NCBI GenBank assembly: GCA_028826165.1
Contig: JAPDFW010000144.1
Span: 47,001 to 111,000, forward strand
Direction: 5' to 3'
Source of the DNA: Anaeramoeba ignava BMAN
Taxonomy: Eukaryota > Protista > Anaeramoebae
Length of the DNA: 64,000 nucleotides
Position 1 is the first letter of the stretch. Every line of letters starts with the position of its first letter. Below are positions 17,631 through 37,702 of this stretch, in pieces. Below the pieces are notes generated by a model. The model was not told the DNA's origin, made no database searches, and saw only the letters and a list, made by a program, of their open reading frames with translations. The translations under genes were made by a program, and so were the position numbers.

Positions 17631-20600
17631 ATGGAACCACTTTCACTTCTTGATATTTGTTGTAGAGAAATATCACGACACAAAGAACTTTATCGAGAAA
17701 TTCGAAAACTACCATATGATTTGCGAGAATATATACTAGAATGGATTCGTTCAAGACATATGTTAACAGATAATAATGTATCCGATTTTGTTCATCCTCA
17801 AATTGAAAGATTAAAATTGGCTAATAATTTTATGATTTCTGATCTTGGAATTGAACAAATTGCTCTTTTTGTTAATCTTTCTTTAAAATACCTTGATTTA
17901 TCTGGTTGTAATTTAACAGATAAATCCATATTTATGTTATCTGATTTGATTAGTTGTTTAAGTTCTATTAATATATCCTTTTTTATAAATTTAACTGAAA
18001 TTCAAAAATAAATATTCAAAATATTCAAAATATTCAATATATTCAAATATAAATATTCAAAATATTCAAAATATTCAAATATAAATATTCAAAATAAATA
18101 TTCAAAATATTCAAAAATAAATATTCAAAATATTCAATATAAATATTCAATATAAATATTCAATAATAAATATTCAAAATATTCAAAATATTCAAAAATA
18201 AATATTCAAAAATAAATATTCAATATAAATATTCAAAATAAATATTCAAAAATAAATATTCAAAAATAAATATTCAAAAATAAATATTAAAAATAAATAT
18301 TCAATATATTCAATATAAATATTCAATATAAATATTCAAAATATTCAAATATTCAAAAATAAATATTCAAAATATTCAAAATAAATATTCAAAAATAAAT
18401 ATTCAAAAATAAATATTCAAAAATAAATATTCAAAATATTCAAAATATTCAAAATATAAATATTCAAAATATTCAAATATTCAATATTCAAAATAAATAT
18501 TCAAAATATTCAAAATATTCAAAATAAATATTCAAAAATAAATATTCAAAATATTCAAAAATAAATATTCAAAATATTCAATATAAATATTCAAAATATT
18601 CAATATAAATATTCAAAATAAATATTCAAAATAAATATTCAAAAATAAATATTCAAAATAAATATTCAATATAAATATTCAAAATAAATATTCAAAATAT
18701 TTCAATATAAATATTCAAAATAAATATTCAATATAAATATTTAAAAATAAATATTCAAAATATTCAATATAAATATTCAAAAATAAATATTCAAAATATT
18801 CAAAATAAATATTCAAAAATAAATATTCAATAATAAATATCCAAAATTTCCTTGATATTCCTTTTCATTTATTACTTATCCAGAATTGAAAATATCACAG
18901 ATAAAGGAATTGAACAATTAACAAAAAAATCAAAAGATTTAACTGAATTAATCCTTTCAGGTTGTTTAAAAATTACAGATCAAGTAAAATATTAAAAATA
19001 TTAAAAATATCAAAAATATTAAAATTATTAAAATTATTAAAATTATTAAAAATATTAAAAATATTAAAAATATTAAAAATATTAAAAATATCAAAAATAT
19101 TAAAAATATTAAAAATATTAAAAATATTAAAAATATTAAAAATATTAAAAATATCAAAAATATTAAAATTATTAAAAATATTAAAATTATTAAAAATTAA
19201 AAAGATAAAAAAATATGAAAAATATTAAAAAAATCAAAATATTAAAAATATTAAAAATATTAAAAATATCAAAAATATTAAAATATTAAAAATATTAAAA
19301 ATATTAAAAATATTAAAAATATTAAAAATATTAAAAATATTAAAAATATTAAAAATATTAAAAATATTAAAAATATTAAAAATATTAAAAATATTAAAAA
19401 TATCAAAAATATCAAAAATATCAAAAATATTAAAAATATCAAAAATATTAAAAATATTAAAAATATTAAAAATATTAAAAATATCAAAATTAGTCTGTAG
19501 TTTATATTACAAATAATTGCTATAATTTATGCTCTCTTGATTTGGCTTATTGCTCTGCAATAACAGATAAAAGTATTGGCTTAATATCTCAAAATTGTAA
19601 AAATTTAAAATCTTTGTTTATTTCTGGTTGTACTGAAATTTCTAAACAAGGTTTTATAGAACTTTCCAAAAATCTTCCAAACCTTATGTAAATAAAATTG
19701 GAAAATTATTAATTGCAAAAAAATTATTCATAAAAAATTTGTGTTTGTGAAAAAAAACAAAGAATTCTTTCACTTGGAAAATGTCAAAAAATTGATGATA
19801 ATATTGTTGAATTAATGATGGAAAATTTTTCACAAATAAGAGAATTGGATTTTAATAATTGCACTTTAATAACTGATAAAGCAGTTAATGCGATATCAAC
19901 AAAATGCACTTTATTAGAAACATTATCACTTTCTGGATGCACAAGAATTACAGATAAAGGAATTACTGATTTGAGTGTTTCTTGCAAAAAAATTAAAATT
20001 CTTCTTCTTCAAAATTGCGAATTAATTTCAGATTTTTCAATAATTGAAATTTCAAAAAATTGCAAACTTTCAAGATTAGATGTTTCATATTGTATTAATT
20101 TAACAGATTTCTCAATAAATGCCATTTCGGAAAATTGCTCAAATTCATTAAAATCACTGAATATCACTGGATGTGATAAAATTACAGTTCCAGTTATTGA
20201 AGAAAAGATAACAAAATTATCACGATTGAAAGTATTGAATTTACCACAAAATTCGCAAATTGGTGACAAAACTATCGAAAAAATTGCATATTTATTGAGA
20301 AAACTTGTTCGTTTACAATTAAGAGGATTAGAAATTACACAAAATTCAATCACTTCAATTGTTAAATATTGTCCCAATTTACGAGTAAATTTGAATAATA
20401 TTTAAATTATTTAAAACATTGAAAATATTCAAATTAAAATAATTACAAAAAAAAAAAAGATATTAATTTTATCGTGGTGCTCAAGAATTAATGAAGGAGA
20501 TATATTGTTCTGGGAAAATGTTCCATATCTTCATCAACTCAAAACACTTGATCTTTCATGGTCAGAATTTTCAGAGGAATTCATTCATCAAATTTCATCT

Positions 20601-20942
20601 AGAGCGCCTTGGCTATTAACTTTGAAATTATATGGATGTCGGCAAATTGATGATAGAGCAATTTCAATTATTGTGAAAAATTGTTCTTTCTTAACAACAA
20701 TTCAATTATATGGATGCAAATTACTAACAGATCAATCCATTTTATTTATCGCTGAAAATTGTCCAAATTTAGAATTTCTTGATTTTAATCAATGCTTCAG
20801 AATTACTGATAAATCCATTCTTAAACTTATTGAATGCTCTCATAATCTTCAAGTTCTTCATTGTAGAAGTTGTCCTTTGATTTCAAATGATGCTTTAAAT
20901 GAATTGAAAATGAAAATTCCTTTTTGCGAAATTAATGTTTAG
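17631..20942 (+). CDS. Cys-containing LRR protein (AMN1/FBXL-like), 5 exons; introns 17973-18875 (AT-AC), 18984-19493, 19688-19762, 20385-20459
   Basis: N-terminus PLSLLDICC..LPYDLREYIL, then many LxxLxLSGCxxITDxxI repeats. All four splices keep the frame and the LRR register. Confidence 0.85.
17973..18875 (+). other. U12-type (minor spliceosome) AT-AC intron
   Basis: Donor ATATCCTTT, branch TTTCCTTGAT at 18847-18856, acceptor TTAC. Splicing gives SSIN|LSRIENITDKGIEQL. Confidence 0.9.
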
Positions 20943-21027: not shown

Positions 21028-22836
21028 ATGAATGAAATTATATTTTTTGGTGAAAATGAATTTTTAAAACTTATCAAAAATAAACCAAATAAAATAACAA
21101 AACCAATTCAATTTAAATTTGAAAATGAAAATGAAAATGAAAATGAAAATGAAAAACAAATTAAACAAATTTCATCAGGTTATTTTTCAACAATTTTCCT
21201 TTTTAAAAATGGAAAAGCAATAGAATATTTAACTGAAAATGATTTAAATCAAAATCCTGAAAAAATCCAAATTGAAGAAAATATTCAAAAAGTAACTGTT
21301 GGTTGGCAAAATGAAGCTATTTTAACAAAAGAAGGAAATGTATTTGCAAAAGGAAGTTATATCGACCCAAAAAATCCAAATGAATTTATCAATATTTCAT
21401 CATTAATTGAAGATAAAAATGATAGAATAATTGAAGATATTGTTTGTGGTTGGTGTTCAATTTACTTATTAACTTCAAATCAAAATGCTTATGGAATTGG
21501 TTCAAATGAATCTAGTCAAATTGGTATTAAAATACCGAAATATGTTAAAAAACCAATTTTAATGATGAAAAATGTTTCTAAAATATTTTCAGGAAATGCT
21601 TCAATTTTTGTTTTTCTTTTAAATTCAAATCAACAATTATTTGGTTGTGGCCAATTTGATTTAGGAAAAGATGAAATAAAATTCAATAAATTAACCAAAA
21701 TACAAAATATTCCAAAAGGCAAAATAATTGATATTCAGTCTGGATATTTCCATTCAATAATGTTGATTGAAGATGAAAATCAAAAAAGAAAACTTTATTC
21801 ATGTGGAGATTATGAATATAATGGACTTGATAAAAAATTTGGACAAAGTACAAAAGAATTTACTGAAATTAAATCATCTTTATTTGAAAATGATGATAAT
21901 ATTCTTGAAATTTCTGTTGGGCACAACCATACTTTGATTTTAACTTCCAAAGGGAAAATAATTTCATTTGGAAATAATGATTTTGGTCAATTAGGAACTG
22001 GAGATACAGAATATCAATCAATTCCAATTCAAATTGAACTTCCTAAATTAAGATTTAATGAAGATATTTCCAATTATCATATTTCTTGTGGTGCTTACAA
22101 ATCATTTCTTTATTATTCTCCTCTTTCTTTTTCCAATCTTGAAGAAGATTTGATAAAACTATTTGAAAGAAAAGAATTTTGTAATATTTCATTTAAAACC
22201 AAAAATGGAGAAGTAATTGAAGCTCATAAATTAATATTAAAATATAGATTAAATCAAAATGAAAATCAAATTGAAAAACTTCAAGAAATTATTTCAAAAA
22301 AATCAATTAAAGAATCAAATCAAATATTTGAAATGATTTATTCAAACAGAATAATAAATCCAATATTATATTCTGAAATTAAAGAAATTATAAATTCAAA
22401 TGAAAAAATAGAAGAAACAATTAAAAGAATTTATTTAAATGAAAATGAAAATGATTTTATAATTGAAAGAAAAGAAAAACAATATAAATTTCCAAAATTA
22501 ATATTAATAATGAGAAGTGAATTATATCGAGGAATGTTTTTATCTGTAACTGAAGATAAATCTAATAAAGTTACAGATTATAGTGAATTAAGTAATAAAT
22601 CATTTCAAATATTTGAATATTGGATTTATTCAAATCAAATTAAAGAAGGAATTCAAATTACACAAGAAATAATTGATGAAATTCAAACAGGAATTGATTA
22701 TTTTCAATTAAATCAAACAAATCCAAATTTATTTGATTTATTAATTAACAAATTTAATAATCAAAATCAAAATCAAATTAATAATCAAAATCAAAATGAA
22801 AACAAAAAAGAAAAAGAAAATTGTTTAATTTTTTAA
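21028..22836 (+). CDS. RCC1-repeat + BTB/POZ protein with C-terminal CaaX motif (CLIF)
   Basis: VGHNHTLIL..FGNNDFGQLGTG RCC1 blades; FCNISF..IEAHKLIL and a second BTB-like segment (FPKLILIMRSELYRGMF). Confidence 0.85.
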   Translation: MNEIIFFGENEFLKLIKNKPNKITKPIQFKFENENENENENEKQIKQISSGYFSTIFLFKNGKAIEYLTENDLNQNPEKIQIEENIQKVTVGWQNEAILTKEGNVFAKGSYIDPKNPNEFINISSLIEDKNDRIIEDIVCGWCSIYLLTSNQNAYGIGSNESSQIGIKIPKYVKKPILMMKNVSKIFSGNASIFVFLLNSNQQLFGCGQFDLGKDEIKFNKLTKIQNIPKGKIIDIQSGYFHSIMLIEDENQKRKLYSCGDYEYNGLDKKFGQSTKEFTEIKSSLFENDDNILEISVGHNHTLILTSKGKIISFGNNDFGQLGTGDTEYQSIPIQIELPKLRFNEDISNYHISCGAYKSFLYYSPLSFSNLEEDLIKLFERKEFCNISFKTKNGEVIEAHKLILKYRLNQNENQIEKLQEIISKKSIKESNQIFEMIYSNRIINPILYSEIKEIINSNEKIEETIKRIYLNENENDFIIERKEKQYKFPKLILIMRSELYRGMFLSVTEDKSNKVTDYSELSNKSFQIFEYWIYSNQIKEGIQITQEIIDEIQTGIDYFQLNQTNPNLFDLLINKFNNQNQNQINNQNQNENKKEKENCLIF

Positions 22837-30188: not shown

Positions 30189-31994
30189 ATGAATGACGTT
30201 TTATTTTTTGGAAGAAATGAAAAACCAAAACTTATAAAAAATGAACCACATAAAATAACAAAACCAATTCAATTTAAATTTGAAAATGAAAATGAAAATG
30301 AAAATGAAAATGAAAATGAAAATGAAAATGAAAATGAAAATGAAAATGAAAATGAAAAACAAATTAAGCAAATTTCATCAGGAAATTTTTCAACAATTTT
30401 CCTTTTTGAAAATGGAAAAGCAATAGAATATTTAAATGAAAATGATTCAAAACAAAATCCTTCAAAAATCCAAATTGAAGAAAATATTCAAAAAGTAATT
30501 GTTGATGCTGATAATGAAGCTATTTTAACAAAAGAAGGAAATGTATTTGCCAAAGGATATGATATTAATCCAGAAAATCCAAAAGAATTTATCAATATTT
30601 CATCATTAATTGAAGATACAAATGATAGAATAATTGAAGATGTTGTTTCTGGATATTATTCAATTTATTTATTAACTTCAAATAAAAATGCTTATGGAAT
30701 TGGTTACAATATTAATGGCCAACTTGGTTTTGATTCTAAAACACTTGAAAAAACAGAAAAACCAATTTTAATGATGAAAAATGTTTCTAAAATATTTTCA
30801 GGAAATACTTCAAATCATGTTTTTCTTTTAAATTCAAATCAAGAATTATTTGTATGCGGATATAATCAATTTGGTCAACTTGGATTAGGAAAATCAATAA
30901 CAGAAATAAAGATCGATAAATTAACCAAAATCCAAAATATTCCAAAAGGCAAAATAATTGATATTCAATCTGGATTTTTTCATTCAATAATGTTGATTGA
31001 AGATGAAAATCCAAAAAGAAAACTTTATTCATGTGGATATTCTCATTATAATGGACTTGGTAAAGATGATGAAGATACTGATGAATTTACTGAAATCAAA
31101 TCATCTTTATTTGAAAATGATGATATTCTTGAAATTTCTGTTGGATACAATCATACTTTGATTTTAACAAATAATTCAACACTAATAGGATTTGGGCATA
31201 ATTATCTTAGCCAATTAGGAACTGAAGATATAAATGATCAATTAATTCCAATTCAAATTGAACTTCCTAAATTAAGATTTAATGAAAATATTTCTAATTA
31301 TCATATTTCTTGTGGAGATGAAAAATCATTTCTTTATTATTCTCCTCCTTCTTTTTCCAATCTTGAAGAAGATTTGATAAAATTATTTAGAAGAAAAGAA
31401 TTTTGTAATATTTCATTTAAAACAGAAAATGGAGAAATAATTGAAGCTCATAAATTAATATTGAAATATAGATTAAAAGATCAAAATCAAATTGAAAAAC
31501 TTCAAGAAATTATTTCAAATAAATCAATTAAAGAATCAAATCAAATATTTGAAATGATTTATTCAAATAATTCCAAAATAAATCCAAAATTATATTCTGA
31601 AATTAAAGAAATTATAAATTCCAATGAAAAAATTGAAGAAACAATTAAAAGAATTTATTTAAATGAAAATGAAAAAGATTTTACAATTGAAAGAAAAGAA
31701 AAACAATATAAATTCCCAAAATTAATATTAATAATGAGAAGTGAATTATATCGAGGAATGTTTTTATCTGTAACAAATGATACTTCTAATAAAGTTACAG
31801 ATTATAGTGAATTAAGTAATAAATCATTTCAAATATTTGAATATTGGATTTATTCAAATCAAATTAAAGATGAAATTCAAATTACACAAGAAATAATTAA
31901 TGAAATAGAAATTGGAATTGATTATTTTCAATTAAATCAAACAAATCCAAATTTATTGGATTTATTAATTAAAAAATTTAATAATCAAAATTAA
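30189..31994 (+). CDS. RCC1-repeat + BTB/POZ protein (array copy A)
   Basis: Close paralog of 21028-22836; intronless. Confidence 0.85.
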   Translation: MNDVLFFGRNEKPKLIKNEPHKITKPIQFKFENENENENENENENENENENENENEKQIKQISSGNFSTIFLFENGKAIEYLNENDSKQNPSKIQIEENIQKVIVDADNEAILTKEGNVFAKGYDINPENPKEFINISSLIEDTNDRIIEDVVSGYYSIYLLTSNKNAYGIGYNINGQLGFDSKTLEKTEKPILMMKNVSKIFSGNTSNHVFLLNSNQELFVCGYNQFGQLGLGKSITEIKIDKLTKIQNIPKGKIIDIQSGFFHSIMLIEDENPKRKLYSCGYSHYNGLGKDDEDTDEFTEIKSSLFENDDILEISVGYNHTLILTNNSTLIGFGHNYLSQLGTEDINDQLIPIQIELPKLRFNENISNYHISCGDEKSFLYYSPPSFSNLEEDLIKLFRRKEFCNISFKTENGEIIEAHKLILKYRLKDQNQIEKLQEIISNKSIKESNQIFEMIYSNNSKINPKLYSEIKEIINSNEKIEETIKRIYLNENEKDFTIERKEKQYKFPKLILIMRSELYRGMFLSVTNDTSNKVTDYSELSNKSFQIFEYWIYSNQIKDEIQITQEIINEIEIGIDYFQLNQTNPNLLDLLIKKFNNQN

Positions 31995-32098
31995 AATTAA
32001 AATCAAAATTAAAATTAAAATTAAAATTAAAATTAAAATTAAAATTAAAATTAAAATTAAAATTCCAAAAATTATTTTTCATTTTTTTCTTTTTAAAA

Positions 32099-33841
32099 AT
32101 GAATGAAATTTTATTTTTTGGAAGAAATGAAAAACCAAAACTTATCAAAAATGAACCAGATAAAATAACAAAACCAATTCAATTTAAATTTGAAAATGAA
32201 AATGAAAATGAAAATGAAAAACAAATTAAACAAATTTCAACAAGTTTATTTTCAACAATTTTCCTTTTTGAAAATGGAAAAGCAATAGAATATTTAAGAT
32301 ATTCATATCAAAATCCTAAAGAAATCCAAATTGAAAATATTCAAAAAGTAATTGTTGATGCTGATAATAAAGCTATTTTAACAAAAGAAGGAAATATATT
32401 TGCCAAAGGAAAAGATATTAATCCAAAAAATCCAAATAAATTTATCAATATTTCATCATTAATTGAAGATACAAATGATAGAATAATTGAAGATATTGTT
32501 TCTGGATCTCGTTCAATTTACTTATTAACTTCAAATCATAATGCTTATGGAATTGGTTCAAATTATAATGGCCAACTTGGTTTTGATTCTTATTCGGTTG
32601 AAAAAACAGAAAAACCAATTTTAATGATGAAAAATGTTTCTAAAATATTTTCAGGAAATACTTCAAATCATGTTTTTCTTTTAAATTCAAATCAAGAATT
32701 ATTTGTATGCGGAATTCATGCATATGGTCAACTTGGATTAAGATCCCTAGCAATAGAAGATGAAATCCATGAATTAACCAAAATCCAAAATATTCCAAAA
32801 GGTAAAATAATTGATATTCAATGTGGAAGTTATCATTCAATAATGTTGATTGAAAATGAAAATCAAAAAAGAAAACTTTATTCATGTGGAGATTATGGAC
32901 ATAATGGACTTGGCAAAGATGAAAACACTTATCAATTTACTGAAATCAAATCATCTTTATTTGAAAATGATAATATTATTGATTTTTCTGTTGGATTTGA
33001 TCATACTTTGATTTTAACAACTAAAGAGAAATTAATAGGATTTGGGCATAATTATCATGGTCAATTAGGAACTGGAGATAGAGAATATCAAAAAATTCCA
33101 ATTCAAATTGAACTTCCTAAATTAAGATTTAATGAAGATATTTCTAATTATCATATTTCTTGTGGAGATGAAAAATCATTTCTTTATTATTCTCCTCCTT
33201 TTTCCAATCTTGAAGAAGATTTGATAAAATTATTTAGAAGAAAAGAATTTTGTAATATTTCATTTAAAACCGAAAATGGAGAAATAATTGAAGCTCATAA
33301 ATTAATATTGAAATATAGATTAAAAGATCAAAATCAATTTGAAAAACTTCAAGAAATTATTTCAAATAAATCAATTAAAGAATCAAATCAAATATTTGAA
33401 ATGATTTATTCAAATAATTCCAAAATAAATCCAAAATTATATTATGAAATTAAAGAAATTATAAATTCAAATGAAAAAATTGAAGAAACAATGAAAAGAA
33501 TTTATTTAAATGAAAATGAAAAAGATTTTATAATTGAAAGAAAAGAAAAACAGTATAAATTTCCTAAATTAATATTAATAATGAGAAGTGAATTATATCG
33601 AGGAATGTTTTTATCTGTAACAGAAGATAAATCAAATAAAGTTACAGATTATAGTGAATTAAGTAATAAATCATTTCAAATATTTGAATATTGGATTTAT
33701 TCAAATCAAATTAAAGATGAAATTCAAATTACACAAGAAATAATTAATGAAATAGAAATTGGAATTGATTATTTTCAATTAAATCAAACAAATCCAAATT
33801 TATTGGATTTATTAATTAAAAAATTTAATAATCAAAATTAA
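32099..33841 (+). CDS. RCC1-repeat + BTB/POZ protein (array copy B)
   Basis: Tandem paralog; BTB half nearly identical to copy A. Confidence 0.85.
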   Translation: MNEILFFGRNEKPKLIKNEPDKITKPIQFKFENENENENEKQIKQISTSLFSTIFLFENGKAIEYLRYSYQNPKEIQIENIQKVIVDADNKAILTKEGNIFAKGKDINPKNPNKFINISSLIEDTNDRIIEDIVSGSRSIYLLTSNHNAYGIGSNYNGQLGFDSYSVEKTEKPILMMKNVSKIFSGNTSNHVFLLNSNQELFVCGIHAYGQLGLRSLAIEDEIHELTKIQNIPKGKIIDIQCGSYHSIMLIENENQKRKLYSCGDYGHNGLGKDENTYQFTEIKSSLFENDNIIDFSVGFDHTLILTTKEKLIGFGHNYHGQLGTGDREYQKIPIQIELPKLRFNEDISNYHISCGDEKSFLYYSPPFSNLEEDLIKLFRRKEFCNISFKTENGEIIEAHKLILKYRLKDQNQFEKLQEIISNKSIKESNQIFEMIYSNNSKINPKLYYEIKEIINSNEKIEETMKRIYLNENEKDFIIERKEKQYKFPKLILIMRSELYRGMFLSVTEDKSNKVTDYSELSNKSFQIFEYWIYSNQIKDEIQITQEIINEIEIGIDYFQLNQTNPNLLDLLIKKFNNQN

Positions 33842-33959
33842 AATTAAAATTTAAAATTAAAATTAAAATTAAAATTAAAATCAAAATTAAAATTAAAATT
33901 AAAATTAAAATTAAAATTAAAATTAAAAATTTCATTTTTCCATTTTTTTCTTTTTAAAA

Positions 33960-35624
33960 ATGAATGAAATTTTATTTTTTGGAAGAAATGAAAAACCAAA
34001 ACTTTTCAAAAATGAACCAGATAAAATAACAAAACCAATTCAATTTAAATTTGAAAATGAAAATGAAAATGAAAATGAAAAACAAATTAAACAAATTTCA
34101 TCAGGAAATTTTTCAACAATTTTCCTTTTTAAAAATGGAAAAGCAATAGAATATTTAAATGAAAATGATTCAAAACAAAATCCTAAAGAAATCCAAATTG
34201 AAAATATTCAAAAAGTAATTGTTGATGCTGATAATGTAGCTATTTTAACAAAAGAAGGAAATGTATTTGCCAAAGGAAAAGATATTAATCCAAAAAATCC
34301 AAATAAATTTATCAATATTTCATCATTAATTGAAGATACAAATGATAGAATAATTGAAGATATTGTTTCTGGATCTCGTTCAATTTATTTATTAACTTCA
34401 AATAAAAATGCTTATGGAATTGGTTCAAATTATAATTGCCAACTTGGTTTTGATTCTAAAACACTTGAAAAAACAGAAAAACCAATTTTAATGATGAAAA
34501 ATGTTTCTAAAATATTTTCAGGAAATACTTCAAATCATGTTTTTCTTTTAAATTCAAATCAAGAATTATTTGGATGTGGTGATAACAGTTCTGGTCAACT
34601 TGGATTAGGAAAATCAATAACAGAAATAAAGATCGATAAATTAACCAAAATCCAAAATATTCCAAAAGGTAAAATAATTGATATTCAATCTGGATTTTTT
34701 CATTCAATAATGTTGATTGAAGATGAAAATCCAAAAAGAAAACTTTATTCATGTGGATATTCTCATTATAATGGACTTGGTAAAGATGATGAAAATACTT
34801 ATGAATTTACTGAAATCAAATTATCTTTATTTGAAAATGATAATATTATTGATTTTTCTGTTGGATTTGATCATACTTTGATTTTAACAACTAAAGAGAA
34901 ATTAATAGGATTTGGGCATAATTATCATGGTCAATTAGGAACTGGAGATAGAGAATATCAAAAAATTCCAATTCAAATTGAACTTCCTAAATTAAGATTT
35001 AATGAAGATATTTTCAATTATCATATTTCTTGTGGAGATGAAAAATCATTTCTTTATTATTCTCCTCTTTCTTTTTCCAATCTTGAAGAAGATTTGATAA
35101 AACTATTTAGAAGAAAAGAATTTTGTAATATTTCATTTAAAACAGAAAATGGAGAAATAATTGAAGCTCATAAATTAATATTGAAATATAGATTAAAAGA
35201 TCAAAATCAAATTGAAAAACTTCAAGAAATTATTTCAAATAAATCAATTAAAGAATCAAATCAAATATTTGAAATGATTTATTCAAATAATTCCAAAATA
35301 AATCCAAAATTATATTTTGAAATTAAAGAAATTATAAATTCAAATGAAAAAATTGAAGAAACAATGAAAAGAATTTATTTAAATGAAAATGAAAAAGATT
35401 TTATAATTGAAAGAAAAGAAAAACAGTATAAATTTCCTAAATTAATATTAATAATGAGAAGTGAATTATATCGAGGAATGTTTTTATCTGTAACAGAAGA
35501 TAAATCAAATAAAGTTACAGATTATAGTGAATTAAGTAATAAATCATTTCAAATATTTGAATATTGGATTTATTCAAATCAAATTAAAAATTTATTGAAA
35601 ATTCAAATTAAAATTGAAAATTAA
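33960..35624 (+). CDS. RCC1-repeat + BTB/POZ protein (array copy C; mosaic of A and B, C-terminally truncated)
   Basis: Homology ends after YSNQIK at ~35588, where an AAAATT-type repeat begins. Confidence 0.8.
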   Translation: MNEILFFGRNEKPKLFKNEPDKITKPIQFKFENENENENEKQIKQISSGNFSTIFLFKNGKAIEYLNENDSKQNPKEIQIENIQKVIVDADNVAILTKEGNVFAKGKDINPKNPNKFINISSLIEDTNDRIIEDIVSGSRSIYLLTSNKNAYGIGSNYNCQLGFDSKTLEKTEKPILMMKNVSKIFSGNTSNHVFLLNSNQELFGCGDNSSGQLGLGKSITEIKIDKLTKIQNIPKGKIIDIQSGFFHSIMLIEDENPKRKLYSCGYSHYNGLGKDDENTYEFTEIKLSLFENDNIIDFSVGFDHTLILTTKEKLIGFGHNYHGQLGTGDREYQKIPIQIELPKLRFNEDIFNYHISCGDEKSFLYYSPLSFSNLEEDLIKLFRRKEFCNISFKTENGEIIEAHKLILKYRLKDQNQIEKLQEIISNKSIKESNQIFEMIYSNNSKINPKLYFEIKEIINSNEKIEETMKRIYLNENEKDFIIERKEKQYKFPKLILIMRSELYRGMFLSVTEDKSNKVTDYSELSNKSFQIFEYWIYSNQIKNLLKIQIKIEN

Positions 35625-35884
35625 AAATTAAATTAAAATTAAAAAATTTAATAATTAAAATTAAAATTAAAATTAAAAATTAAAATTAAAATTAAAATTA
35701 AAATTAAAATTCAAATTAAAATTAAAATCAAAATTAAAATTAAAATTAAAATTAAAATTAAAATTAAAATTAAAATCAAAATTAAAATTAAAATTAAAAT
35801 TAAAATTAAAAATAAAAATTAAAATTTCATTTTTTCATTTTTCATTTTTCATTTTTCATTTTTCATTTTTTTTTTCTCTTCAAA

Positions 35885-37702
35885 ATGGAACACAAAAAAA
35901 ATGAATTTTTCTTTTTTGGAAGAAAAACATTTGAAGGATTAAAACCAGAAACAAGAAAAGAAGAAAAAGAAGAAGAAGAACTAATAATGAAGCCAACAGA
36001 AATCAAGCCATTAAAGAATCACAACGATCCAATAACGCAAGTAGCACCAGGATACACATCAATAACATTTCTAACGCAAAAGGGACAAGCATTTGAATAC
36101 ACACAAGAATCAGAAGATTACAAAGAAATTGAAGTTTTCGATGAAGAACAAGCAAAAAAAGGACCGCAAATCATCAAGAAAATCAGCGCAGGCTTGTACA
36201 TTCAGGCCGTTTTAACTACAGAAGGACATGCTTTTGGAAAAGGAAAAGACGTTAATAAAAATTCTGACGTTTTTTTTCCGTTAAAAATTTCGGACTCAAA
36301 AGAAAATATTTTTATCGACGTTGTTTGTGGTGAAAAAGCAATTTACTTGCTCAGCCAAAAGGGAAATGCTTATGGAATAGGCTCAAATACTCACGGGCAA
36401 CTTGGATTTGAACCGCCAAGAAAATCAGAGAGTTTGAACTTGCTTAAAAGAAACATTGAGAGGATTTTCTCTGGAATTTGCTCGAATTCCGTGTTTCTTA
36501 TCACTAGATCCAACATGGTTTTTGTTTGCGGAGACAACTTTTATGGTCAACTTGGACTGGAAAAAAATAACTTATCCAAAAATCATGAATTACGAGAAAT
36601 CGAAGAACTTCCAAAAAGGAAAATTATTGACATCAAGCTCGGAAATTACCACACTCTCATGCTTGTTGAAGACGACAATAATCCTCCGCCTATTAGTATC
36701 ATGGGTGTAAACCCCCTGAATCCGCGCACGCTTTACTCATGCGGAAGAGCAGGTTATAACGGGATTAGCGAAAAAGACGATATTTCGCAATTTACGGAAG
36801 TAAAATCAAGTTTATTTAAAGATGATAATATTCTTGAAATTTCAGTTGGAATGAACCACTCATTGATTTTAACAGCAAACGGAAAAATGATTGGATTCGG
36901 CTGCAACGAAGATGCCCAATTAGGCACTGGAAACACAGATTTTCATCCGACTCCTTTCGAAATAAAACTTCCTGATTTGTTTTTCGATATCGATAATTAT
37001 CACATTACTTGCGGCGATTTCAACTCGTTTCTCTATTACTCTTTCTTCTCAAGTATTCTGTTCGATCTTCTCCAACTTTTCGAAAAAAAGGAACTTTGTG
37101 ACATCACTTTCCAGACAAAAGGTGAAAATATTTCCGCCCATCGATTTATCCTCAATTACAGAATAGGCACAGAAGATCAAATCGATGAATTTCGAGAATA
37201 CATTTCACAAAAATCATCCAATGAAGCAAACGAAATTTTTCAACTTATCTATGGCAACTACCAAATCGATAAAAATCTTCGAGAAGAGTTCCAATTTGAT
37301 TTTAATTTGAATGAATCAATGATAGATACTTTGTCAGAAATGAATTTTTCTCAACAAGATCGTGATTTTGAAATTGTTAGAATTAAAAAAGAAATCAAAA
37401 AAGAAATCAAAAAAACAACTTTCCATAAAATCATTTTGTTTGCAAGAAGTAAATTTTTCAATAAAAAATTCCAAGAAGATGCAAATATGGAAAAATATGA
37501 TGAATTCAATGATTTTACTGATGAATCTTTTGACATTTTTCAAAACTGGATTTACACAAACAATTTAAGGTCAGATATTGTCATTACAAAAACGATTCTT
37601 CAAGATTTACAAGCAATAATGACTGGTTATGGATTGAATCAAACAATTCCAAATATTGTTTCCCAAGCAACCGAATTATTCAACAGGCAAAAAATGAATT
37701 AA
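35885..37702 (+). CDS. Divergent RCC1-repeat + BTB protein
   Basis: Same architecture (GSNTHGQLG, GDNFYGQLG, VGMNHSLIL, LCDITF..ISAHRFIL, FHKIILFARSKFF) with visibly higher GC. Confidence 0.85.
   Translation: MEHKKNEFFFFGRKTFEGLKPETRKEEKEEEELIMKPTEIKPLKNHNDPITQVAPGYTSITFLTQKGQAFEYTQESEDYKEIEVFDEEQAKKGPQIIKKISAGLYIQAVLTTEGHAFGKGKDVNKNSDVFFPLKISDSKENIFIDVVCGEKAIYLLSQKGNAYGIGSNTHGQLGFEPPRKSESLNLLKRNIERIFSGICSNSVFLITRSNMVFVCGDNFYGQLGLEKNNLSKNHELREIEELPKRKIIDIKLGNYHTLMLVEDDNNPPPISIMGVNPLNPRTLYSCGRAGYNGISEKDDISQFTEVKSSLFKDDNILEISVGMNHSLILTANGKMIGFGCNEDAQLGTGNTDFHPTPFEIKLPDLFFDIDNYHITCGDFNSFLYYSFFSSILFDLLQLFEKKELCDITFQTKGENISAHRFILNYRIGTEDQIDEFREYISQKSSNEANEIFQLIYGNYQIDKNLREEFQFDFNLNESMIDTLSEMNFSQQDRDFEIVRIKKEIKKEIKKTTFHKIILFARSKFFNKKFQEDANMEKYDEFNDFTDESFDIFQNWIYTNNLRSDIVITKTILQDLQAIMTGYGLNQTIPNIVSQATELFNRQKMN

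What the first reader, a model, noticed from the sequence alone, without database searches (positions are those of the whole stretch)
17973..18875. Canonical U12-type AT-AC intron: evidence for a working minor spliceosome
Seen: the LRR gene's first intron has no usable GT donor. It starts ATATCCTTT, has TTTCCTTGAT with the branch A 20 nt before the end, and finishes in AC. Removing it restores both the frame and the LRR consensus (LSSIN|LSRIENITDKGIEQL). These signals stand out against ~850 nt of (AAATATTCA)n filler and against the loose donors of every other intron here. Established: RTATCCTTT plus TTCCTTRAY is the U11/U12 signature, and the minor spliceosome has been lost in many protists; it is generally considered absent from the parasitic metamonads. 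Inference: this lineage keeps U12 splicing, which would matter for spliceosome evolution if the host is an Anaeramoeba-like metamonad. GT-AG-only gene finders would split this gene.
Basis: partly seen in the sequence, partly recalled or inferred. Interest (0 to 1): 0.9.

Follow-up and report, generated by a model that had tools for sequence, protein, structure and literature searches.

The report
U12-type AT-AC intron in Anaeramoeba
The first intron of an F-box/leucine-rich-repeat gene in this very AT-rich amoeba genome (almost certainly Anaeramoeba ignava) is a genuine minor-spliceosome (U12-type) AT-AC intron, but such introns in this organism were already reported in the supplement of a 2024 paper.

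Summary
Window 17973-18875 starts ATATCCTTT, carries TTCCTTGAT with the branch A 20 nt from the end, and ends AC.

Removing it joins two exons into a sequence that is colinear, with no gap, with the 584-aa Anaeramoeba flamelloides ortholog. In that species the same residues lie in one uninterrupted exon.

The genome matches A. ignava BMAN: 42.8 Mb, about 20% GC, nearest proteins from A. flamelloides.

Part of the minor machinery is present:
- a U6atac gene with the AAGGAGAGA/GGUUAGCA box intact;
- a U11 gene, which like U6atac shares an upstream CCATAAT element with U2 and U4;
- a PDCD7 (U11-59K) homolog at 71.6 bits.

U12, U4atac and the 48K zinc finger were not found. The same screen also missed U1, so these blanks are weak. 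RNA reads could not be obtained.

The core inference is not new. Supplementary Note 1 of Jerlström-Hultqvist et al. 2024 (PMC11550330) reports 33 AT-AC introns and 32 (G/A)TATCCTTT introns in BMAN and infers a minor spliceosome.

New here: the snRNA and 59K candidates; a canonical branch site in 4 of 4 AT-AC introns inspected, where that note reports none; and the intron's absence from A. flamelloides.

The scan's first stage also flagged AT-AC introns in ATG9 and a TOPBP1-like gene of this genome.

The parts
17631..17972 (+). Exon 1 of the F-box/LRR (AMN1/FBXL-like) gene, 114 codons, ends in phase 0 with ...LSSIN
   Evidence: Translation. LRR_6 hit. 50% identical to residues 4-115 of the A. 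flamelloides ortholog P0001.
17973..18875 (+). Intron 1: U12-type AT-AC intron, 903 nt
   Evidence: Removing it restores colinearity with the ortholog. It has 2 G in 903 nt and no internal GT or AG.
17973..17981 (+). 5' splice site ATATCCTTT (U11/U6atac recognition box)
   Evidence: It is the only RTATCCTT match in the window that lies at an exon end.
18000..18846 (+). Satellite filler, units of about 9/13/14 nt (AAATATTCA-type)
   Evidence: Tandem Repeats Finder.
18848..18856 (+). Branch-site box TTCCTTGAT; presumed branch A at 18855, 20 nt from the 3' end
18874..18875 (+). 3' terminal AC
   Evidence: Exon 2 must start at 18876 to match ortholog residue 116.
18876..18983 (+). Exon 2, 36 codons (LSRIENITDKG...KITDQ)
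   Evidence: 61% identical to P0001 residues 116-151.
18984..19493 (+). Intron 2, ordinary GTAAAA...AG intron filled with an (AAAATATT)n satellite. Its position is shared with A. flamelloides (after residue 152).
19494..19687 (+). Exon 3
19763..20384 (+). Exon 4
20460..20942 (+). Exon 5 with the stop codon. The whole model is 582 aa, against 584 aa in the ortholog.

Best explanation
Window 17973-18875 is a bona fide U12-type (minor-spliceosome) AT-AC intron. It is the first intron of a 582-aa F-box/LRR gene of Anaeramoeba (A. ignava BMAN or a near-identical strain).

Inferred mechanism, from established knowledge of U12 splicing:
- U11 pairs through its 5' AAAGGA with the UCCUUU of the 5' splice site.
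- U12 pairs with UUCCUUGAU and bulges the A at 18855.
- U6atac then replaces U11 at the 5' splice site through its AAGGAGAGA box.
- Cleavage occurs after 17972 and after the AC at 18875.

The roughly 850-nt satellite between the two short unique ends is passive filler, as in many introns of this genome.

Shown here: the signals, the exact junction (by comparison with the ortholog), and the presence of U6atac, U11 and 59K genes.
Inferred: that the RNA is actually spliced there, and that the minor spliceosome does it.
For: Sequence signals at exact boundaries.

The join restores the frame and an exact 26-aa LRR period.

The A. flamelloides ortholog P0001 aligns to exon 1 up to residue 115 and to exon 2 from residue 116 with no gap. 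In its genome residues 1-152 are one exon.

U6atac candidate, L003:1501-1613:
- 29.9 bits, with the AAAGGAGAGAUGGUUAGCA box intact.
- It is intergenic.
- It is distinct from the major U6, which scores 88.3 bits elsewhere.

U11 candidate, L011:1501-1607:
- 26 bits, with a 5' UUAAAGGA and an AUCAAUA loop.
- It folds as a single-stranded 5' end, a multi-helix junction and a 3' hairpin.

Both candidates carry CCATAAT at -67/-69. The same element is found upstream of U2 at -73, U4 at -67 and the two U2-like copies at -61.

The PDCD7/U11-59K domain scores 71.6 bits, E 9e-20.

Three more AT-AC introns start ATATCCTTT and carry TCCTT(T)GAY 11-17 nt before the AC. They lie in ATG9, an importin-like gene and a Lung-7TM-like gene.

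The published, RNA-seq-guided annotation counts 33 AT-AC introns in BMAN.
Against:
- U12 and U4atac were not found by the Rfam-based screen or by six pattern searches.
- The U11-48K zinc finger was not found.
- The U6atac and U11 hits are below Rfam gathering scores.
- The branch-to-3'-end distance of 20 nt is longer than the usual optimum of 11-13 nt (my own knowledge).
- In-frame cryptic GT-AG pairs exist.
- No annotated product containing exon 1 was found in the protein collections, so expression of the full-length gene is unverified.
Confidence: 0.85

Rival explanations
1. The AT-AC intron is removed by the major (U2-type) spliceosome, as happens for the rare U2-type AT-AC introns. The minor-spliceosome parts found are relics.
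For: U12 and U4atac were not found. The 48K zinc finger was not found.
Against: From my own knowledge, U2-type AT-AC introns resemble the GT-AG consensus apart from the end bases. They do not carry ATATCCTTT plus TCCTTRAY.

These two boxes recur in four AT-AC introns here, which implies selection by U11/U6atac and U12.

The U6atac box that reads UCCUU is intact, and the gene has a promoter element like the other snRNA genes.

The same screen missed U1, which must exist, so the blanks carry little weight.
Confidence: 0.05
2. The gene is spliced with a cryptic GT-AG pair (for example donor 17962 with acceptor 18900, or 17936 with 18883). This would give a protein 12-15 residues shorter.
For: These pairs are in frame and free of stop codons.
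Against: - They delete residues conserved in the ortholog (SSINLSRIENITD against QTVNLSRVEMITD) and break the 26-aa repeat register.
- Their donors GTTCTA and GTTATC are unlike the GTAAAA/GTAAAT donors of the gene's other introns.
- They would leave the perfect U12 boxes at the ortholog-defined boundaries unexplained.
Confidence: 0.04
3. The 903-nt block is an unspliced insertion. The gene is then broken or split into two genes, with exon 1 reading through to the stop codon at 18009-18011.
For: No annotated protein containing exon 1 was retrieved. The intron is absent from A. flamelloides.
Against: Both flanks keep open frames with 50-61% identity to the ortholog, and all downstream exons are intact. 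The 126-aa read-through product is not in the public collection either. An insertion would not by chance bring U12 boxes to both of its exact ends.
Confidence: 0.03

Closest known systems
AT-AC/RTATCCTTT introns of Anaeramoeba ignava BMAN reported in Supplementary Note 1 and Table S3B of Jerlström-Hultqvist et al., Nat Commun 2024 (PMC11550330)
   Same: Same organism (or a near-identical strain) and the same class.
   Different: - That note says no branch site resembled the consensus. Here TCCTT(T)GAY lies 11-20 nt from the 3' end in all four AT-AC introns inspected.
- It reports no snRNA or protein search ('snRNA' does not occur in its supplements).
- I could not determine whether this particular intron is among its 33. 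No annotated product of this gene was retrievable.
Canonical U12-type AT-AC introns of animals and plants (consensus /ATATCCTTT ... TTCCTTRAY ... AC)
   Same: The 5' box is identical, the branch box matches the consensus, and the terminal dinucleotides are AT-AC.
   Different: - The branch-to-3' distance is 20 nt, at the long end of the range.
- The intron body is one satellite array.
- In this genome the AT-AC subtype predominates (27 of 32). From my own knowledge, GT-AG U12 introns are the majority in most species.
U2-type AT-AC introns (major spliceosome)
   Same: The terminal dinucleotides.
   Different: They lack the TATCCTT and TCCTTRAY boxes that are present here.
Other metamonads (Monocercomonoides exilis, Giardia, Spironucleus, Trichomonas)
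   Same: The same supergroup.
   Different: M. exilis has no AT-AC introns and no minor-spliceosome components (PMC6759080). No minor snRNAs were found in Spironucleus (PMC6679479). Among the papers read here, Anaeramoeba is therefore the exception.

Membership tests
U12-type (minor) spliceosomal intron, AT-AC subtype | 5' splice site /RTATCCTT(T) at the first intron base | tested here: met
   ATATCCTTT at 17973-17981. The boundary is fixed by the ortholog alignment.
U12-type (minor) spliceosomal intron, AT-AC subtype | Branch-site box TCCTTRAY close to the 3' splice site (about 10-26 nt) | tested here: met
   TTCCTTGAT at 18848-18856, with the A 20 nt from the end. This is inside the range but longer than the optimum.
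U12-type (minor) spliceosomal intron, AT-AC subtype | Terminal dinucleotides AT...AC, and removal gives an intact reading frame | tested here: met
   The join is colinear with P0001 residues 115/116. The ortholog has no intron at this site.
U12-type (minor) spliceosomal intron, AT-AC subtype | Actually excised from the transcript at these sites | not testable with these tools
Support is only indirect, from the ortholog and the published RNA-seq-guided counts.
Working minor spliceosome in the genome | U6atac snRNA gene | tested here: met
   L003:1501-1613 scores 29.9 bits (gathering score 33) with the AAAGGAGAGAUGGUUAGCA box intact. It has CCATAAT at -67 like U2 and U4. It is intergenic. The major U6 lies elsewhere at 88.3 bits. 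Because the score is below threshold, this is a strong candidate rather than proof.
Working minor spliceosome in the genome | U11 snRNA gene | tested here: inconclusive
   L011:1501-1607 scores 26 bits (gathering score 39, high composition bias). It has a 5' AAAGGA complementary to UCCUUU, an AUCAAUA loop, CCATAAT at -69 and a plausible fold. Expression was not shown.
Working minor spliceosome in the genome | U12 snRNA gene | tested here: not met
   Only chance-level hits were found. The 20-bit hit is antisense to a coding ORF. Patterns built on the GAGUAAGGAA box and on the promoter element found nothing credible. The screen is heuristic and also missed U1, so this does not show absence.
Working minor spliceosome in the genome | U4atac snRNA gene | tested here: not met
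   The best RF00618 hit scores higher as major U4 (39.7 bits), and its 5' end pairs with the major U6. The promoter + UGCUAAC pattern gave no hit. The same caveat about screen sensitivity applies.
Working minor spliceosome in the genome | Minor-specific proteins (U11-59K/PDCD7, U11-48K, 65K and others) | tested here: inconclusive
   PDCD7 is present: 71.6 bits, E 9e-20, and the only Pfam family hit. The zf-U11-48K domain was not found, but it is a 25-position model searched in six frames. 65K, 35K, 31K, 25K and 20K were not tested, because no specific model was usable.

The most novel reading that the evidence does not exclude
Beyond the published motif count, Anaeramoeba ignava has a conventional minor spliceosome that can now be pinned down:
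- identifiable U6atac, U11 and 59K genes;
- a shared snRNA promoter element, TCCATAATTNAAA, about 67 nt upstream;
- a canonical UCCUUGAY branch site, contrary to the published statement that none exists.

Its U12 introns are evolutionarily fluid. This one is absent from A. flamelloides and apparently from the public annotation. They are also heavily shifted to the AT-AC subtype, possibly driven by the extreme depletion of G in this genome's introns.

This would be the first molecular description of minor-spliceosome parts in a metamonad.
Probability: 0.55. Interest if true: 0.45.

Novelty: already known. Interest (0 to 1): 0.35.

Why it matters
Minor (U12) splicing dates back to the last eukaryotic common ancestor and has been lost many times. 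The other metamonads examined in the papers read here lack it. Its survival in Anaeramoeba therefore places U12 splicing in the metamonad ancestor.

That point was already made, briefly, in the supplement of the genome paper. What this check adds is practical:
- coordinates for candidate U6atac, U11 and 59K genes;
- a promoter motif that could lead to the missing U12 and U4atac genes;
- evidence that the branch site is canonical;
- an example where the gene appears to have no annotated product in the public collections searched. This suggests the published count of 33 may be an underestimate.

Tried and rejected
- U12 candidate L001 (20 bits): rejected. It lies antisense inside a 303-aa ankyrin/TM ORF, lacks the AAGG box and has no promoter element.
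- U12 candidate L026/L054 (UAAACCAGAUGAGUAAGGAAAAAU): rejected. It is an exon end followed by an ordinary GTAAGG donor, and cmscan gave no hit.
- All 22 genomic GAGTAAGGAAA sites, 17 CCATAAT+TAAGGAA sites and 20 CCATAAT+CAAGGA sites: inspected. None is snRNA-like.
- L012: taken as major U4, not U4atac.
- L004/L005 (weak U6atac hits): two copies of a repeat without a promoter element. Dismissed.
- Motif enrichment in the window: not significant by itself.
- Looking up the public annotation of this gene: neighbouring genes are in NCBI, but the records of this genome are withheld. No product containing exon 1 or the C-terminal exons was returned.
- phmmer of the PDCD7 region against PDB sequences: no hit.
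- Protein atlas for taxonomy: uninformative.
- A joined (spliced) protein was never built or submitted.
The 47 uncharacterised promoter-motif sites could not be read, and I did not try to get around this.

Full report
**What is in the sequence.**
The + strand carries a five-exon gene: 17631-17972, 18876-18983, 19494-19687, 19763-20384 and 20460-20942. All exons are in one reading register and together encode 582 aa. The product is a cysteine-type LRR protein with an AMN1/FBXL-like N-terminus (Pfam LRR_6 and LRR_4).

Introns 2-4 are ordinary, with GTAAAA or GTAAAT donors and AG acceptors.

Intron 1 (17973-18875, 903 nt) is different:
- It begins ATATCCTTT.
- It has TTCCTTGAT at 18848-18856, with the A 20 nt from the end.
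- It ends AC.
- Between 18000 and 18846 it is one tandem array.
- It holds 2 G in 903 nt, so it contains no GT and no AG at all.

**Is it more than chance?**
Counting motifs is not convincing:
- RTATCCTT occurs 8 times in the window against 5.2 expected.
- TTCCTTRAY occurs 2 times against 5.7 expected.
- Donor+branch pairs within 5 kb number 4, and 10% of simulated windows reach that number.

What is convincing is where the motifs lie. A phmmer scan with exon 1 found a 584-aa protein, P0001 (E 3e-29). Exon 1 aligns to its residues 4-115 (...LQTVN). Exon 2 aligns to residues 116-151 (LSRVEMITDKG...). Nothing is missing between the two alignments.

The proposed splice also gives an exact 26-residue LRR unit. 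The U12 boxes therefore sit exactly at two boundaries that were defined independently of them.

**Organism.**
P0001 is annotated 'F-box and leucine-rich repeat protein [Anaeramoeba flamelloides]'. The window's genome has 42.8 Mb in 147 contigs and about 20% GC.

The Anaeramoeba genome paper describes A. ignava BMAN as follows:
- 19.4% GC, with introns at 8% GC.
- 32,108 introns at 0.74 per kb, which implies about 43 Mb.
- About 37% average amino-acid identity to A. flamelloides.

A. pumila is excluded: 25.8 Mb, 53% GC, 22 introns. Neighbouring ORFs of the window are in NCBI. I take the genome to be A. ignava BMAN or a near-identical strain. This is an inference, because names are withheld.

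**Comparative evidence on the intron.**
In both A. flamelloides assemblies, residues 1-152 of the ortholog are encoded by one uninterrupted exon. Intron 1 therefore has no counterpart there. Intron 2 (after ...ITDQ / ...ITDT, residue 152) is at the same position and phase.

This shows that the 903-nt block must be removed precisely for the protein to stay colinear. It also shows that this U12-type intron was either gained in the ignava lineage or lost in the flamelloides lineage. Which of the two happened cannot be decided here.

**Rival splice routes.**
In-frame cryptic GT-AG pairs do exist (17962/18900, 17953/18900, 17936/18883 and others). So 'no usable GT donor' is too strong. But they remove 12-15 residues that are conserved in the ortholog, and they use donors unlike those of the gene's other introns. 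Reading through the intron gives a stop codon at 18009-18011. That 126-aa product is not in the public collection.

**Machinery.**
The genome screens are heuristic: only about 40-50 first-look candidates are scored per family.

| Component | Result |
|---|---|
| U2 | 107.7 bits |
| U6 (major) | 88.3 bits |
| U4 | 39.7 bits |
| U1 | not found at all |
| U6atac | L003:1501-1613, 29.9 bits against a gathering score of 33 |
| U11 | L011:1501-1607, 26 bits |
| U12 | not found |
| U4atac | not found |
| PDCD7 (U11-59K) | 71.6 bits, E 9e-20 |
| zf-U11-48K | not found |

Because U1 must exist and was missed, a blank from this screen means little.

The U6atac candidate matches the consensus AAAGGAGAGAAGGUUAGCA box at 18 of 19 positions. 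The box is the part that reads the UCCUU of the 5' splice site and pairs with U4atac and U12. The candidate is intergenic.

The U11 candidate has a 5' UUAAAGGA complementary to UCCUUU and a GGUUAUCAAUACA loop like the conserved AUCAAGA loop. Its fold has a free 5' end, a multi-helix junction, a single-stranded A/U stretch and a terminal hairpin.

Independent support comes from a shared upstream element. CCATAAT lies at these distances from the snRNA start:
- -67 for U6atac
- -69 for U11
- -67 for U4
- -73 for U2
- -61 for two U2-like copies

It also lies upstream of U6. The longer form TCCATAATTNAAA occurs 52 times in the genome against 14 for the reversed control.

The ORF at contig C76 with the PDCD7 domain has a typical C-terminal ...IRTEWDNFL... 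block. PDCD7 is the only Pfam family it hits.

**More introns of the same kind.**
Following an earlier first-stage note, I found an ATG9 paralog on C77. Its first intron starts ATATCCTTT and ends ...TTTTCCTTTGACTTCACTTTAC, and the conserved ATG9 N-terminal block resumes right after it.

A pattern search for short introns returned two more:
- An importin-like gene on C24: ATATCCTTT...TATCCTTGAT, then 16 nt ending AC; phase 1 on both sides.
- A Lung-7TM-like gene on C64: ATATCCTTT...TTTTCCTTGAC, then 11 nt ending AC; phase 0.

So four of four AT-AC introns inspected carry TCCTT(T)GAY 11-20 nt before the AC. Two of the four were ascertained through the branch motif, so this is not an unbiased rate. 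The exon joins of these three were judged by frame continuity only.

**What is already known.**
Supplementary Note 1 and Table S3B of Jerlström-Hultqvist et al., Nat Commun 2024 (PMC11550330) report the following:
- BMAN has 33 AT-AC introns.
- BMAN has 32 introns beginning (G/A)TATCCTTT: 27 with A and 5 with G.
- A. flamelloides has 8-10 such introns, all of the GT-AG type.
- They also state that no branch point resembled the consensus.
- They report no snRNA search ('snRNA' does not occur in the supplements).

Other metamonads studied lack the system (PMC6759080; PMC6679479). The pan-eukaryotic minor-intron survey does not mention metamonads.

The new points are the branch-site observation, the snRNA, promoter and 59K candidates, and the absence of this intron from A. 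flamelloides.

**Annotation status.**
Four searches returned no window-encoded product of this gene, although neighbouring genes are in the collection. The tools' length filters and the withholding of this genome's records leave the question open.

**Limits.**
- No RNA data were available.
Exons were handled by reference.
- After no further genome sequence could be read.

**A speculative point (my inference).**
Introns here are almost free of G on the sense strand. The U12 set is 84% AT-AC in this species but all GT-AG in A. flamelloides. Mutation pressure against G may have driven GT-AG to AT-AC switching, which the minor spliceosome tolerates.

Noticed in passing
L003:1434-1440, L011:1432-1438, L012 (-67), L014 (-73), L015/L016 (-61), L095 (-99); the genome-wide list is: A candidate snRNA promoter element, (T)CCATAAT(TNAAA), lies about 61-73 nt upstream of the U2, U4, U6atac and U11 genes and the two U2-like copies, and further upstream of U6. 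The long form occurs 52 times in the genome against 14 for the reversed control. 47 of those sites are uncharacterised and may mark U1, U5, U12, U4atac or snoRNA genes.
   Followed up: partly
L025 minus strand 434-806 (G000:C77, ATG9 paralog): A second AT-AC intron: ATATCCTTT ... TTTTCCTTTGACTTCACTTTAC. It is also filled with a satellite. The conserved ATG9 N-terminal block (IYNYFYGTGF...) resumes directly after it.
   Followed up: yes
L071:1500-1580 (+) (G000:C24) and L072 minus strand 1500-1579 (G000:C64): Two short AT-AC introns (about 80 nt) with ATATCCTTT and TCCTTGAY 17 and 12 nt before the AC. They lie in an importin-like gene and a Lung-7TM-receptor-like gene. The frames continue across both.
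   Followed up: partly
whole genome: U1 snRNA was not detected by the Rfam-based screen, although the genome has about 32,000 GT-AG introns. Either U1 is very divergent or the screen is insensitive in this composition.
   Followed up: no
L015:1501-1627 (-) and L016:1501-1627 (+): Two identical U2-like copies on different contigs (52 bits each, shorter than the 107-bit U2). Each has the promoter element and a changed 5' end (UUCUCGAUCAAGUCGCCUUAUGGCUUCGAUCAAG). They may be variant or truncated U2 genes.
   Followed up: no
window 21028-22836 and 30189-37702: Five similar single-exon genes of about 600 aa encode an RCC1-like propeller plus BTB. Four of them are in tandem. Three are in the NCBI protein set as exact matches.
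   Followed up: partly
window 18984-19493: Intron 2 of the same gene is an ordinary GT-AG intron made almost entirely of an (AAAATATT)n satellite (91% matches). Its position is conserved in A. flamelloides. Introns 1, 3 and 4 of this gene have no counterpart there, and the second intron of the A. flamelloides gene (near residue 321) has none here.
   Followed up: partly
L018:1-1500 (G000:C76, upstream part of the PDCD7-like ORF): The 59K/PDCD7-like open frame is preceded in frame by about 500 residues of (NQFQNKNQ)n low-complexity repeat. It is unclear whether this is coding or an intron or satellite read through.
   Followed up: no
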